Sequence record: NC_019538.1
Length of the DNA stretch: 64,000 nt
Reading direction: 5' to 3' (one strand)
Position 1 is the first letter of the stretch. Each line of letters begins with the position of its first letter. The notes beneath the pieces are model-generated. The model was not told the DNA's origin and searched no databases. It was given only the letters and a program-made list of their open reading frames with translations. Below, piece after piece: positions 36,284-56,671 of the stretch. Both the position numbers and the translations under genes were made by a program.

Positions 36284-36670
36284 TTAAAAAAGAATTTTCA
36301 CGATAGTAAAAATTATTGCGTAATGAACAAGATGATGTGCCATTTGGTCTAGACCGAGATGATACCAAAATACTGGTTCTTGTGGTGTGTGACCTCGACT
36401 TAATTCAACTTTCATTTTATCAATAAAGAAGTGAGATATAAAATCAAAAAGAGTAAGACCAAGTACAACCCATATGTTCAAACCCATAATGATCGCAACG
36501 AACATTGTCATTAATGCATGTACCGTACAATGTGCTGCAAGGGGTGTAACCCAACCAACCTCTTTAAATTTCCCAAGCATATACTTACCTTGTAACAGGT
36601 AATCCGCTGAAAAATGTTTTATTTGGTAAAACACCAACAACCAAAAAATAGTACTAACAGGTTCAATCAT
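36284..36670 (-). CDS. DUF3307-family membrane protein
   Basis: HF.AD..LQ...K, HCTVH, HFFID..K and GLDQMAH motifs with TM segments. Confidence 0.8.
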   Translation of the reverse strand: MIEPVSTIFWLLVFYQIKHFSADYLLQGKYMLGKFKEVGWVTPLAAHCTVHALMTMFVAIIMGLNIWVVLGLTLFDFISHFFIDKMKVELSRGHTPQEPVFWYHLGLDQMAHHLVHYAIIFTIVKILF

Positions 36671-37818
36671 TTCAAAAAGTCCTTACAAACAATGTTCTCA
36701 TCAAATACTTCTGGGTATCCAAGAAGGTTCACCAGACGTTGACGACATGCTACCACGTTAGATTCCACTATGTCAAAACCAAAAAGCTGATGAGAAATGG
36801 TTTCCTTATCATGACCCATATCTAGCCTACGCTCGGCAATCCGGTACAAAATGTTACCGTCACCACAGGCAGGGTCACAAAAGGAACCATCCCAGTTAAC
36901 AACACGGTCAAGTAACATATCAGTAACCACGTCTGGGGTAAAAACCTCGTGGGTGGATTTCTGTCGCTCTAAGTTAAACTCGGAAGCAACCCGATTCTTA
37001 TCCTCTGTGTGCGTCCCTGAATGGTATCTTCCTCGTGTTTCTACTTCATAGTAGGGTAACACACCCATATAGTCACAAATCCACTCACGAATCGTTGGAA
37101 GAGGTTTGGTGAGGTCTGGATATGGTACTGATGCCAGAGTACCAGAATCTAAATGCTGGTTGTTTTTATAAAGCGCCAAGAAAACTCTAGCATAATCCGA
37201 CTTGATATACTCCAAGAATTTATTCGCTTCTTCTAAAGTATCAAACCCATAGTGATGCCATTTAAGATTTGGTTTCGTTTCTACTATGTATTCTTTAGGG
37301 ACCATAGTAAAGAAATCTGCGTTAAACCTTTCCCCAGCGATTGGGACATGACCACGGATCAAACCAATATTGACGAAATAGTTTCCTTCTGGATTTTGGC
37401 TATTTAAAAGATTCTTTTGAACTGGTAACGCTTCATACAGCTTTGATATCTGGGTTCCGAAATAGTTTAGTTCATCAACTTTCATCCTATTTCTACCGTT
37501 CGTCATAGGCCCGTATACATCGATATACCCACTAAATGGAACACCAATTATTGTATGGGTTATGGATAATGGTACAAATAATCCAGCAGAAAAATAGAGG
37601 TTCCCATCAATTAGTTCCATTGATGTTATGTTTTCGCCGACTATCTTTTTAAATTCAACCACCCGTTTTTGTTCTTTGACTGGACGACGATTAAAAAATG
37701 GGGCAGATGGATGAACACAAATTATCTCTCTCCCAATAGAACTCGCTTTGTTAAAGAAGTCTAAGTGGAGATTCCTGTTATATGGTGGATTCATTATCAC
37801 GTAATCATATGAAATCAT
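36667..37818 (-). CDS. Amino (N6A/N4C) DNA methyltransferase, circularly permuted gamma-like
   Basis: NPPY at residues 10-13; EVFTP 291-295, DPACGDG 315-321, GFDI 347-350, NIVCKDFL at the C-terminus. Confidence 0.8.
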   Translation of the reverse strand: MISYDYVIMNPPYNRNLHLDFFNKASSIGREIICVHPSAPFFNRRPVKEQKRVVEFKKIVGENITSMELIDGNLYFSAGLFVPLSITHTIIGVPFSGYIDVYGPMTNGRNRMKVDELNYFGTQISKLYEALPVQKNLLNSQNPEGNYFVNIGLIRGHVPIAGERFNADFFTMVPKEYIVETKPNLKWHHYGFDTLEEANKFLEYIKSDYARVFLALYKNNQHLDSGTLASVPYPDLTKPLPTIREWICDYMGVLPYYEVETRGRYHSGTHTEDKNRVASEFNLERQKSTHEVFTPDVVTDMLLDRVVNWDGSFCDPACGDGNILYRIAERRLDMGHDKETISHQLFGFDIVESNVVACRQRLVNLLGYPEVFDENIVCKDFLK

Positions 37819-55798: not shown

Positions 55799-56671
55799 TT
55801 AAGCAGCAAACGGAATATCTAGTTTTCCGTTATGAAGATAACCATCAATTGTTACAATATCGTAAACTTTGTTCTTTTCATCAAGCACATAGTTTAGATC
55901 GACACATTTCTCGTCAAAAACCAACACGGGGTTGTTTAGTGGGTGTGGTTCTCGTTTCAGAAACTCTTCACATGCGTCGAATTGATTTTCGTAAATGTGA
56001 ACGTTGTTCATAACATGGGTAACCTTCCCGACCTTATGACCCGTGATCTTAGCCATCAGTTCTAGGAAAAACCATGCTTGGAGCATATTGGCGGGGCCAC
56101 CTAGAAGGATGTCAGTGCTACGTTGATACGACGTAAGGTGAAGGGTATCACCGATAAGCTGGAACTGGTGCATCATCATACAAGGACGTAAACAACCTTC
56201 TTCGAACCGAGAAGGATCCCAGAAGGTGATGATCTCACCGCGATTATCAATACCAGCTTTCAGATCTTCATACACATCCCAAAGTAGGTCATATTCCCCA
56301 CCCATGTTACCAAAGTCACGGGCGATTGCACCATAGACGTTACCCATATCATCCTCACCTAGTCGGTTCGGATTGGCTAACCATGCTTTTGTCTCATTTG
56401 CGTTGGCATCCCATGTACGAGTCCCGAGATCCCGAAATTGCTTTGCGCTGGTATATCCTCGCAGATAACCCACAAACTCAGCGATGAACATCTTGAAGAA
56501 AACGTGTTTATGAGAAATCATCGGACATCGGTCATAAACCATAACATGAGTTGGAATAGTTCGACAAACATATCCAGTACGAGAGTTGAAGATGTCATGA
56601 CCAGATTCAAAAACATTCTTTACTAGATTGTAATATTCTGATTCGTACTTACCTTGTGGGAGTAATGTCAT
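55799..56671 (-). CDS. td: Thymidylate synthase (uninterrupted)
   Basis: RTG, WDANA, LRPC (catalytic Cys), YQRSTDILLGGPANM, HIYENQ. Confidence 0.95.
   Translation of the reverse strand: MTLLPQGKYESEYYNLVKNVFESGHDIFNSRTGYVCRTIPTHVMVYDRCPMISHKHVFFKMFIAEFVGYLRGYTSAKQFRDLGTRTWDANANETKAWLANPNRLGEDDMGNVYGAIARDFGNMGGEYDLLWDVYEDLKAGIDNRGEIITFWDPSRFEEGCLRPCMMMHQFQLIGDTLHLTSYQRSTDILLGGPANMLQAWFFLELMAKITGHKVGKVTHVMNNVHIYENQFDACEEFLKREPHPLNNPVLVFDEKCVDLNYVLDEKNKVYDIVTIDGYLHNGKLDIPFAA

What the first reader, a model, noticed from the sequence alone, without database searches (positions are those of the whole stretch)
36667..37818. Circularly permuted gamma-type (Eco57I-like) DNA amino-methyltransferase
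Seen: the protein starts at YDYVIMNPPY (motif IV, residues 10-13), runs through a TRD-like region, and ends with motifs X, I, II and III (EVFTP 291-295, DPACGDG 315-321, GFDI 347-350, NIVCKDFL 375-382). Known: gamma-class enzymes carry these same motif sequences in the order X-I-II-III-IV-TRD, with DFL immediately before FD.IIGNPPY. Here the chain is opened at exactly that junction, giving beta-class order with gamma-class sequences. Inference: a natural permutant, or a reverse-order fusion of the two half-genes. It may protect the genome from host restriction, and it is translationally coupled to a DUF3307 membrane gene.
Basis: partly seen in the sequence, partly recalled or inferred. Interest (0 to 1): 0.65.

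Follow-up and report, generated by a model that had tools for sequence, protein, structure and literature searches.

The report
Circularly permuted phage amino-methyltransferase
A conserved gene of Aeromonas phage CC2 encodes a methyltransferase whose two halves sit in the reverse order to its closest relatives, apparently because two neighbouring half-genes fused end to end, which makes it a natural example of how the order classes of DNA methyltransferases can arise.

Summary
ORF 36667-37818(-) is gp189 of Aeromonas phage CC2 (383 aa). It starts at motif IV (NPPY, residues 10-13) and ends with motifs X, I, II and III.

With the C-terminal 109 residues moved to the front, the protein aligns in one collinear stretch with ~380-aa gamma-order relatives (28-31% identity, E 1e-32 to 1e-40). 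In native order it gives two swapped matches. No beta-class Pfam model (PF01555) matches it. Only N6_Mtase matches, on the C-terminal part. The AlphaFold model nevertheless has beta-class connectivity: the 11 best PDB matches are all beta-class enzymes (Z 8.4-10).

At least 15 independent phage genomes carry the gene uninterrupted, and dN/dS is about 0.04, so it is neither a misassembly nor a pseudogene.

Other phages encode the two halves as separate genes in the same order. Aeh1-type fused proteins equal one whole half-protein plus about 9 residues plus the other. End-to-end gene fusion therefore seems the likely origin, and it happened at least twice.

Activity on DNA N6-adenine is inferred, not shown. 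The overlap with DUF3307 is real but not conserved.

Verdict: a new variant of a known kind, of moderate interest.

The parts
36667..37818 (-). Whole CDS: gp189 of Aeromonas phage CC2, 383 aa, a permuted amino-methyltransferase
   Evidence: ORF list and translation. Annotated F485_gp189. Full-length match to phrog_11371, E 1e-219. Intact, in one piece, in at least 15 phage records. dN/dS 0.041 against phage Assk.
37087..37818 (-). N-module (residues 1-244): strand beta4 plus NPPY (motif IV), the rest of the catalytic half, and a TRD-like region
   Evidence: The N-module HMM finds more than 100 cluster representatives at E<1e-28. In gamma-order relatives it follows the SAM half directly (for example P0034 108-355). 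The AF2 model aligns to M.TaqI 96-412 (Z 7.3), CamA and BseCI, and to type I M subunits over residues 1-119. dN/dS 0.043.
37780..37791 (-). Motif IV, NPPY (residues 10-13)
   Evidence: Invariant in the family alignments A1 and A2.
36982..37086 (-). Linker (residues 245-279) joining the old C-terminus of the catalytic/TRD half to the old N-terminus of the SAM half. It holds LPYY (254-257; nt 37048-37059), a likely remnant of the 'IPDYY' tail of stand-alone half-proteins.
   Evidence: pLDDT <50 for residues 244-255 and 257-281. It is the most variable block of alignment A1. dN/dS is 0.146, against 0.03-0.04 in the two modules. The tail consensus is seen in A2.
36670..36981 (-). C-module (residues 280-383): the SAM-binding half, with motifs X, I, II and III (helix plus beta1-beta3)
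   Evidence: Pfam N6_Mtase on residues 280-359. phrog_21201, a 156-aa 'DNA methyltransferase', on residues 272-371. M.BseCI 8-92 aligns to 282-364. 31-39% identical to the separate small proteins PVA23_330 and the L005 C-half. dN/dS 0.025.
36934..36948 (-). Motif X, EVFTP (residues 291-295)
   Evidence: E, F, T and P are invariant in A1.
36856..36876 (-). Motif I, DPACGDG (residues 315-321), the SAM-binding glycine loop
   Evidence: PACGDGNIL is invariant in A1.
36769..36780 (-). Motif II, GFDI (residues 347-350)
   Evidence: G347 is invariant in A1.
36673..36696 (-). Motif III, NIVCKDFL (residues 375-382). The chain ends one residue later, in the beta3-beta4 loop where gamma-order relatives continue into F-D-x-I-I-x-NPPY.
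   Evidence: In gamma-order relatives, C-module profile position 108 lies about 5 residues before N-module profile position 3-4.

Best explanation
gp189 is a functional S-adenosylmethionine-dependent amino-methyltransferase. It is a natural circular permutant of gamma-type (N6_Mtase/Eco57I-like) enzymes.

The chain begins at strand beta4 and the NPPY catalytic loop. It runs through the rest of the catalytic half and a TRD-like region, crosses a roughly 35-residue flexible linker, and ends with the SAM-binding half (motifs X, I, II, III). The two ends fold together into one Rossmann-type methyltransferase domain. Its connectivity is therefore that of beta-class enzymes, although its ancestry is gamma-type.

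The permuted gene most likely arose by end-to-end fusion of two adjacent half-genes: a catalytic/TRD half upstream and a small SAM half downstream. That split arrangement is common in phages.

The most likely substrate is the N6 of adenine in double-stranded DNA, marking the phage genome, which appears to lack hydroxymethylcytosine.

Shown here: the motif positions, the permutation, the purifying selection, the split relatives, and the end-to-end match of the fused forms. Inferred: intramolecular assembly (model only), fusion rather than fission as the direction of change, enzymatic activity, and DNA adenine as the target.
For: Permutation:
- The re-permuted sequence aligns collinearly with gamma-order relatives P0034, P0038, P0045, P0097, P0029 and P0049 over 356-383 columns, at 27-31% identity and E 2e-32 to 3e-40. 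The native order gives two swapped HSPs.
- Of the 165 proteins held, 36 carry the C-module before the N-module and 15 carry it after.
- The gamma-order relatives match Pfam N6_Mtase, Eco57I and UPF0020.

Fold:
- The AF2 model has pLDDT 69.9 and pTM 0.66.
- The 11 best of 48,161 PDB representatives are all beta-class amino-MTases: M.BceJIV, MboIIA, TTHA0409, CcrM, M1.HpyAVI, RsrI, EcoP15I and Mbo45V Mod, PvuII and rotifer N4CMT. They score Z 8.4-10.0, span model residues 1 to 365-380, and align 140-185 residues.
- Gamma-class chains align only to residues 1-119 or 1-247.

A real gene:
- One-piece tblastn matches occur in at least 15 Aeromonas phage genomes.
- dN/dS is 0.04 overall, 0.043 in the N-module and 0.025 in the C-module.
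- Catalytic and SAM motifs are invariant across the family down to 40% identity.

Origin by fusion:
- Split pairs in N-then-C order occur in Vibrio phage PVA23 (genes overlap by 4 nt), in L005, in S-CAM7 and in 13 of 25 IMG/VR loci.
- Aeh1-like P0017 residues 2-263 match all of P0018 (1-262 of 262, 45%), and residues 273-400 match the L005 C-half residues 6-148 (43%).
- In both module trees the fused clade groups with these same split partners: the N-module clade at 99*, and the Aeh1-type C-module with the L005 and PVA23 small subunits at 94.
- P0055 lies elsewhere in both trees, and P0028's C-module lies among the small subunits in the C-module tree (P0028 was not in the N-module tree). This indicates at least two independent fusions.

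DNA context:
- Homologues lie beside queD/queC in PVA23.
- They lie beside a glycosyltransferase in L005.
- In Aeh1 the homologue is three genes from ORF087c, a glucosyltransferase predicted to modify DNA (PMC8056088).
- In S-CAM7 the two halves flank a ResIII/DEAD helicase.
- CC2 has a thymidylate synthase but no second PF00303 member, no Dam and no PF01555 gene.
Against: - No enzymatic or methylome data exist for CC2 or any homologue.
- The model is of moderate confidence, and its TRD part is weak (pLDDT <50 in 154-171 and 219-224). Its fit to the TaqI and CamA TRDs is loose (rmsd 5.3-6.3 A), so DNA binding is not shown.
- NPPY enzymes also include rRNA m6A/m2G and protein-glutamine methyltransferases. 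Weak sequence matches to METTL5 and Trm14 appear. Some source names for the gamma-order relatives are 'RNA methylase' or 'RsmD'.
- Fusion against fission is argued from the end-to-end match, not from a rooted, well-supported tree. The CC2 and Aeh1 clades are not resolved as sisters, and the C-module tree has few starred branches.
- In many split systems the large subunit keeps a pseudo SAM half that AF2 packs into the fold. The small subunit's role there is unclear.
Confidence: 0.72

Rival explanations
1. It is simply an ordinary member of the classical beta class (the PF01555 N6_N4_Mtase lineage: M.PvuII, M.RsrI, CcrM, type III Mod), so nothing was permuted recently.
For: The motif order IV - TRD - X - I - II - III is by definition the beta order. 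The best structural matches of the model are all beta-class enzymes, Z 8.4-10.
Against: PF01555 matches neither the protein nor anything else in the genome. The only Pfam family above its cut-off is N6_Mtase, on the C-terminal part. Motif IV is NPPY, whereas the consensus reported for beta topology is DPPY/SPPF (preprint 10.1101/2023.12.13.571470). Gamma-order relatives align end to end once the sequence is re-permuted, E down to 3e-40.
Confidence: 0.04
2. The enzyme is real and permuted, but its substrate is not DNA adenine. It could be RNA (rRNA or tRNA m6A/m2G), a protein glutamine, or an already modified base in a DNA hypermodification pathway.
For: NPPY is shared with such enzymes. There are weak PDB sequence matches to METTL5 (residues 1-53, E 0.011) and Trm14. 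Sources name some gamma-order relatives 'predicted RNA methylase' or 'RsmD'. Homologues neighbour queD/queC and glycosyltransferase genes.
Against: The region after the catalytic half aligns with the DNA-recognition parts of M.TaqI, CamA and M.BseCI. The closest Pfam and PDB families are DNA MTases. The known preQ1 methylase DpdM belongs to an unrelated fold, DUF3109 (PMC10516641). CC2-like phages lack the que and glucosyltransferase genes (PMC8056088).
Confidence: 0.2
3. The two halves do not pair within one chain. The protein works as a domain-swapped homodimer, in which the N-module of one chain is completed by the C-module of the other.
For: The ancestors were apparently two separate polypeptides that had to assemble in trans. 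Beta-class MTases are generally dimers (PMC7544214). The linker is only about 35 residues and is poorly modelled.
Against: The AF2 monomer model already aligns as one domain with beta-class enzymes across residues 1 to 365-380, with up to 185 aligned residues. No multimer prediction could be run.
Confidence: 0.15
4. The open reading frame is an assembly artefact or a decaying pseudogene made by juxtaposing two fragments.
For: None beyond the unusual order. Raw reads could not be examined.
Against: The same uninterrupted architecture occurs in at least 15 independently sequenced phages of three genera and in metagenome contigs. dN/dS is 0.04, with dS 0.68. All catalytic and SAM-binding motifs are invariant.
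Confidence: 0.01

Closest known systems
Gamma-class N6-adenine DNA methyltransferases (M.TaqI, M.BseCI, CamA; Pfam N6_Mtase PF02384 / Eco57I PF07669)
   Same: The motif sequences agree: EVFTP (X), DPACGDG (I), DFL (III) and NPPY (IV). Pfam N6_Mtase matches. M.BseCI 8-92 aligns to residues 282-364, and 128-139 to residues 6-17. TaqI, CamA and BseCI align structurally from motif IV through their C-terminal TRD. Uncharacterised gamma-order relatives of about 380 aa align end to end after re-permutation.
   Different: The chain is opened between motifs III and IV, and the old termini are joined by a linker. The linear order is therefore IV-TRD-X-I-II-III instead of X-I-II-III-IV-TRD.
Beta-class amino-methyltransferases (M.PvuII, M.RsrI, M.MboIIA, CcrM, EcoP15I Mod; Pfam PF01555)
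   Same: The motif order is the same, and the predicted connectivity of the Rossmann fold is the same. They are the top 11 structural matches, Z 8.4-10.
   Different: There is no detectable sequence membership: PF01555 is silent. Motif IV is NPPY rather than (D/S)PP(Y/F). The TRD is related to gamma-type C-terminal TRDs. The origin is independent and much more recent. Whether it dimerises as beta enzymes do (PMC7544214) is unknown.
Other natural or engineered permuted and split DNA methyltransferases (M.BssHII permuted C5 MTase; engineered circular permutants of CG-specific MTases; split M.SssI fragments)
   Same: These show that the MTase fold tolerates circular permutation and fragment complementation (cited in PMC7544214; PMC3404938).
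   Different: Those are C5-cytosine enzymes or laboratory constructs, with break points at other places. Here the break lies between beta3 and beta4 of an amino-MTase, and the fused gamma-order, split and fused permuted states all exist in nature within one family.
Split relatives in other phages: Vibrio phage PVA23 genes 329/330, metagenomic pair P0018 plus L005:2338-2952, Synechococcus phage S-CAM7 genes 055/057
   Same: Both modules are homologous and in the same gene order. Identity to the Aeh1-type fused proteins is 39-45%, and to CC2 31-39%.
   Different: They are two polypeptides. Some large subunits carry extra N-terminal parts: a GIY-YIG domain or a pseudo SAM half.

Membership tests
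Gamma-class (N6_Mtase/Eco57I-like) amino-methyltransferases | Motif IV is NPP(Y/F) | tested here: met
   NPPY at residues 10-13. Invariant in alignments A1 and A2.
Gamma-class (N6_Mtase/Eco57I-like) amino-methyltransferases | A SAM-binding region with motif X and motif I of the N6_Mtase type, scoring above the Pfam gathering threshold | tested here: met
   PF02384 scores 29.3 bits against a cut-off of 20.4, residues 280-359 to profile positions 16-94. M.BseCI aligns.
Gamma-class (N6_Mtase/Eco57I-like) amino-methyltransferases | Linear order X-I-II-III-IV-...-VIII-TRD | tested here: not met
   The order is IV...TRD-like...X-I-II-III. Native-order BLASTP against gamma-order relatives gives two swapped HSPs.
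Gamma-class (N6_Mtase/Eco57I-like) amino-methyltransferases | Common descent of both halves with gamma-order enzymes | tested here: met
   The re-permuted sequence aligns collinearly over 356-383 columns, E 2e-32 to 3e-40. Both module HMMs hit the same gamma-order proteins.
Beta-class amino-methyltransferases (PF01555 N6_N4_Mtase lineage) | Linear order IV-...-TRD-X-I-II-III | tested here: met
Beta-class amino-methyltransferases (PF01555 N6_N4_Mtase lineage) | Sequence membership in PF01555, with (D/S)PP(Y/F) as motif IV | tested here: not met
   PF01555 does not hit the protein at E<=1 or the genome at E<=0.01. Motif IV is NPPY.
Beta-class amino-methyltransferases (PF01555 N6_N4_Mtase lineage) | Fold connectivity: beta4-beta7 first and beta1-beta3 last, in one domain | tested here: met
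   The AF2 model's top 11 VIA-align matches are all beta-class, Z 8.4-10, spanning residues 1 to 365-380. This rests on a model, not on an experimental structure.
Beta-class amino-methyltransferases (PF01555 N6_N4_Mtase lineage) | Obligate homodimer | not tested
DNA N6-adenine methyltransferase (the activity) | SAM-dependent methyl transfer to adenine N6 in a defined DNA motif | not testable with these tools
   Only inferred, from motifs, relatives and the TRD-like fold.
PHROG 11371 | Full-length match to the profile | tested here: met
   E 9.9e-220, residues 2-383 to profile 2-383 of 383, annotated 'unknown function'. The profile is built from these same Aeromonas phages.
DpdM (dPreQ1 methyltransferase), considered because PVA23's homologues lie next to queD/queC | DUF3109 fold with a CxxxCxxCC metal site | tested here: not met
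   DpdM is described as DUF3109 and metal-binding (PMC10516641). gp189 is a Rossmann-type NPPY enzyme.

The most novel reading that the evidence does not exclude
The wider phage family is at heart a two-subunit methyltransferase. The Rossmann fold is split between beta3 and beta4: a small SAM-binding subunit of about 150 aa, and a catalytic/TRD subunit. The two assemble in trans. Repeated independent fusions in either order have then produced both gamma-order and beta-order single-chain enzymes. If so, this one family holds every intermediate of the process that created the classical permutation classes of DNA methyltransferases. CC2 gp189 would be the fully fused, streamlined end state. The pseudo SAM halves kept by many large subunits would be relics of replacement by the separate subunit.
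Probability: 0.35. Interest if true: 0.7.

Novelty: new variant of a known kind. Interest (0 to 1): 0.52.

Why it matters
The alpha, beta and gamma order classes of DNA amino-methyltransferases have been explained for 25 years by circular permutation. The proposed routes are tandem duplication with truncation, or fission and re-fusion of gene segments (reviewed in PMC7544214). These class-level events are ancient, and no intermediates are left.

Here a beta-type order has arisen recently from gamma-type sequence. Within one family, the fused gamma-order genes, the split gene pairs and the fused permuted genes all still exist, and fusion has happened at least twice. That makes the mechanism directly testable: by phylogenetics, by co-expressing natural half-proteins, and by re-permuting the natural fusion.

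Two practical points follow.
- The gene is labelled 'hypothetical protein' in most Aeromonas T4-like phage genomes, and order-based classifiers or Pfam see only about 80 residues of it. Such enzymes are therefore probably under-counted in phage methylome annotation.
- If it methylates DNA, it is the leading candidate among the MTase families searched here for an anti-restriction DNA mark in a phage group that lacks hydroxymethylcytosine, Dam and PF01555 genes. A second small, TRD-less MTase-like ORF lies elsewhere in the genome.

Tried and rejected
Conservation in independent genomes was used instead.
Trans-assembly and monomer versus dimer therefore remain untested.
- Foldseek against PDB gave only weak matches, all gamma-class (CamA, M.TaqI; best E 2.7e-3). 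A sequential aligner sees only one half of a permutant. The exhaustive VIA-align search was needed.
- The word-index homologue search found only 11 proteins. The exhaustive profile search was needed to find the gamma-order and split relatives.
- A link to 7-deazaguanine chemistry, suggested by the queD/queC neighbours in PVA23, was rejected as the function. DpdM is an unrelated DUF3109 protein, and CC2-like phages lack these genes.
- Functional coupling to DUF3307 was rejected, because the neighbour is not conserved outside Ceceduovirus.
- NCBIfam gave only a 13-residue match around NPPY (TIGR02987, E 0.032, far below its cut-off).
- Bujnicki 2002 (BMC Evol Biol 2:3) and Iyer et al. 2013 could not be read. 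What I say of them rests on citations in other papers and on my own memory.
- AF2 of P0016 was run to see which SAM half completes the fold in three-part relatives. It packed the pseudo half and left the true half unmodelled. This does not explain the small subunit's role.
- The careful or mixture-model tree did not finish. The trees used are quick LG+G4 searches with SH-aLRT support only.
- Earlier notes of this scan near this place concern other genes and were not used.
Full report
**What and where.** The window is the first 64 kb of Aeromonas phage CC2, a T4-like phage (Straboviridae, Ceceduovirus; NC_019538). Window coordinates equal genome coordinates. The ORF 36667-37818 on the minus strand is the annotated F485_gp189, a 383-aa 'hypothetical protein'. 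It sits in a long minus-strand run of small early-region genes. It overlaps both neighbours by the 4-nt ATGA arrangement that is usual in T4-like phages.

**The observation.**
- YDYVIMNPPY, residues 4-13
- EVFTP, 291-295
- DPACGDG, 315-321
- GFDI, 347-350
- NIVCKDFL, 375-382, with the stop one codon later

Family scans agree with this layout.
- Pfam sees only the C-terminal part. N6_Mtase PF02384 matches residues 280-359 to profile positions 16-94 of 311, at 29.3 bits against a cut-off of 20.4.
- PHROGs gives a full-length match to phrog_11371 ('unknown function'). It also matches residues 272-371 to a 156-aa 'DNA methyltransferase' family, phrog_21201.
- A profile of the family against PDB sequences aligns M.BseCI 8-92 to residues 282-364, and its NPPY segment 128-139 to residues 6-17. 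The two pieces are therefore swapped relative to a gamma-class enzyme.

**A real, selected gene.** tblastn finds the protein in one uninterrupted piece in at least 15 independently sequenced Aeromonas phages. These include Ceceduovirus, Ishigurovirus (phage 65, avDM6, ZPAH1) and, at 36-38% identity, the Aeh1/PX29/phiAS5 group. Metagenome contigs carry it too. Against phage Assk, dS is 0.68 and dN/dS is 0.041. By region, dN/dS is 0.043 in the N-module, 0.025 in the C-module and 0.146 in the linker. The catalytic and SAM-binding motifs are invariant down to 40% identity. Misassembly and pseudogene are excluded as far as sequence data can show.

**It is a circular permutant of gamma-type enzymes.** A profile of the family was searched against 1.84 billion cluster representatives and found 3,775 proteins at E<=1e-3. 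I then built separate HMMs for the N-module (residues 1-245) and the C-module (residues 275-383). Of the 165 proteins held:
- 36 carry the C-module before the N-module, with only about 5 residues between the end of one and the start of the other. An example is P0034 (376 aa): C-module 4-101 at E 2e-19, N-module 108-355 at E 4e-32.
- 15 carry the N-module first. These are the CC2 and Aeh1 clades plus P0028 and P0055.
- The rest show only the N-module.

The gamma-order relatives match Pfam N6_Mtase, Eco57I and UPF0020.

The direct test was to move CC2 residues 275-383 in front of residues 1-274. This gives one collinear BLASTP alignment of 356-383 columns with six gamma-order proteins, at 27-31% identity and E 2e-32 to 3e-40. 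The native sequence gives two HSPs in swapped order. The break lies in the beta3-beta4 loop, exactly between DFL (motif III) and the strand that leads into NPPY.

**Predicted fold.** AlphaFold2 on the family alignment gives pLDDT 69.9 and pTM 0.66. The weak parts are the linker (residues 244-281) and some TRD loops. Foldseek, which aligns sequentially, found only weak gamma-class matches. The exhaustive VIA-align search ranked eleven beta-class amino-methyltransferases first: M.BceJIV, M.MboIIA, TTHA0409, CcrM, M1.HpyAVI, M.RsrI, a type III Mod homologue, EcoP15I Mod, Mbo45V Mod, M.PvuII and rotifer N4CMT. They score Z 8.4-10.0, align 140-185 residues, and span model residues 1 to 365-380. Gamma-class chains follow, and they align only to the N-terminal part:
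- M.TaqI 96-412 to residues 1-239, Z 7.3
- CamA, Z 6.2
- M.BseCI, Z 5.5
- type I M subunits to residues 1-119

The model therefore builds one methyltransferase domain from both ends of the chain, with beta-class connectivity. Its catalytic half plus TRD-like region resembles gamma-class enzymes. The beta-class Pfam model PF01555 matches neither the protein nor anything else in the genome. The beta order here is therefore convergent, not inherited.

**How it probably arose.** In other phages the two modules are separate genes, in the same order.
- Vibrio phage PVA23 has gene 329 (552 aa). It holds a GIY-YIG domain (PF22945, E 6e-16), a degenerate SAM-like region, NPPY and the TRD-like part. It overlaps by 4 nt gene 330 (162 aa), which is 39% identical to the C-terminal part of Aeh1 ORF084c, E 6e-31.
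- The closest stand-alone N-half, P0018 (262 aa, starting MFDICLQNPPY), lies on a contig where a 204-aa C-half gene follows one gene further downstream.
- In Synechococcus phage S-CAM7 the N-protein and the C-half flank a ResIII/DEAD helicase gene.
- Of 25 IMG/VR loci found with the N-module, 13 have a separate small C-module ORF directly downstream.

Stand-alone N-halves end in a conserved tail (W-T-D-x-K-L-Y ... I-P-x-Y-Y). The Aeh1-type, P0028 and P0055 fused proteins keep this whole tail, followed by the whole leader of the small protein. In numbers, P0017 residues 2-263 match P0018 residues 1-262 of 262 (45%), and residues 273-400 match the L005 C-half residues 6-148 (43%). In CC2 the tail has shrunk to LPYY, inside the variable linker.

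The module trees agree with this.
- In the N-module tree, the CC2 clade, the Aeh1 clade, the halves P0018 and P0020, and three PVA23-329-like proteins form one clade (SH-aLRT 99).
- In the C-module tree, the Aeh1-type C-modules are sister to the small subunits of L005 and PVA23 (support 94).
- P0055 lies elsewhere in both trees. P0028's C-module lies among the small subunits in the C-module tree; P0028 was not in the N-module tree. Fusion therefore happened at least twice.
- The gamma-order proteins whose C-modules are nearest to CC2's (the P0034 group) have distant N-modules. The modules have evidently been recombined in both orders.

The direction of change, fusion rather than fission, is an inference from the end-to-end match. 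The trees are quick searches with limited support and no root.

**Function.** The protein keeps everything a SAM-dependent amino-methyltransferase needs, and it is under strong constraint. I infer that it is active. DNA N6-adenine is the most likely target, at about 60-65%, for four reasons:
- The nearest characterised families are DNA MTases.
- The region after the catalytic half aligns with the DNA-recognition parts of TaqI, CamA and BseCI.
- Homologues lie in DNA-modification neighbourhoods. These are queD/queC in PVA23, a family-8 glycosyltransferase in L005, and in Aeh1 a position three genes from ORF087c, a glucosyltransferase predicted to modify DNA (PMC8056088).
- CC2 itself has a thymidylate synthase but no second PF00303 member (that is, no dCMP hydroxymethylase), no Dam and no PF01555 gene.

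RNA or protein targets, or action on a modified base, are not excluded. The known dPreQ1 methylase DpdM is an unrelated fold (PMC10516641). The DUF3307 overlap carries no functional weight. Ishigurovirus and Aeh1 have other genes downstream, including an HAD_SAK_2 protein in Aeh1.

**Comparison with what is known.** Circular permutation between the alpha, beta and gamma classes is textbook knowledge, as is a permuted C5 enzyme (M.BssHII). Laboratory permutants and split fragments work (PMC7544214; PMC3404938). A recent topology-based classification ties NPPF/NPPY to its class A and the cat-before-SAM order to DPPY/SPPF in its class B (preprint 10.1101/2023.12.13.571470). gp189 combines class A sequence with class B order. 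I found no paper describing this phage family or a recent gamma-to-beta permutation. The library is incomplete, and two key papers could not be read. I therefore rate it a new variant of a known kind.

**What remains unexplained.** Many large subunits that are followed by a small true SAM-half gene still carry, before NPPY, a SAM-like half. It keeps motif X, but the glycine loop is replaced (for example ILVLFNLEF). P0016 has a true X-I region, this pseudo half and the N-module in one chain. AF2 packs its pseudo half confidently against beta4 and leaves the true half unmodelled. What the small subunit does in those systems is open. Only the 'half'-type partners and the fused CC2/Aeh1 type have no pseudo half at all.

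**Verdict.** The gene is a functional-looking, convergently beta-ordered permutant of gamma-type methyltransferases. It was most likely made by fusion of two phage half-genes. Its biochemical activity and target are untested.

Noticed in passing
CC2 genome 226191-226907 (-), outside the window; L031:1030-1746: A second, small (about 236 aa) methyltransferase-like ORF in the ordinary gamma order with no TRD (FFTP ... DLCAGIGG ... SNPPF). Pfam matches are MTS (E 1e-5), N6_Mtase and Eco57I, all weak. NCBIfam gives a weak PrmC match. Its substrate is unknown.
   Followed up: partly
IMG/VR and phage loci L009, L017, L020, L021, L025, L026, L028; L002 (PVA23_329); L004 (S-CAM7 055): Large subunits of split systems keep a pseudo SAM-binding half: motif X is present but the glycine loop is replaced. 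A separate small gene with an intact SAM half nevertheless follows them. AF2 of the three-part protein P0016 packs the pseudo half into the fold. The role of the small subunit there is unexplained.
   Followed up: partly
L002:1349-3007 (Vibrio phage PVA23 gene 329): The catalytic/TRD half is fused at its N-terminus to a LEM-3-like GIY-YIG nuclease domain (PF22945, E 6e-16). The pair of half-genes lies directly upstream of queD and queC.
   Followed up: partly
L005:3-686 and L003:1-1089 (Aeh1 ORF087c): Glycosyltransferase genes lie next to, or three genes from, the methyltransferase homologues. They are Glyco_transf_8 in L005 and, in Aeh1, the glucosyltransferase predicted to modify DNA (PMC8056088). 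CC2-like phages are reported to lack it.
   Followed up: no
L004:3415-4860 (Synechococcus phage S-CAM7 gene 056): A ResIII/DEAD-box helicase gene sits between the two methyltransferase half-genes. Several relatives of 1,100-1,400 aa carry the N-module at the C-terminus of a long uncharacterised protein (weak phrog_9133 match).
   Followed up: no
L006:5953-7143 (Aeromonas phage 65 homologue, P0012): About 45 residues in the linker region (around residues 253-300) differ completely from phage 65.2, avDM6 and CC2, while both flanks are about 85% identical. This looks like a local double frameshift or a sequencing error in the old phage 65 record.
   Followed up: no
window 36284-36670 (-): The gene downstream of the methyltransferase is a DUF3307 membrane protein (Pfam E 1.4e-10; phrog_2470 E 6e-35). 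It overlaps the methyltransferase stop by ATGA. This neighbour is found only in Ceceduovirus.
   Followed up: partly
window 55805-56638 (-): This is the only PF00303 family gene of the phage. It scores as thymidylate synthase (NF002498, E 8.5e-81, below the equivalog cut-off), and no second copy exists that could be a dCMP hydroxymethylase.
   Followed up: partly
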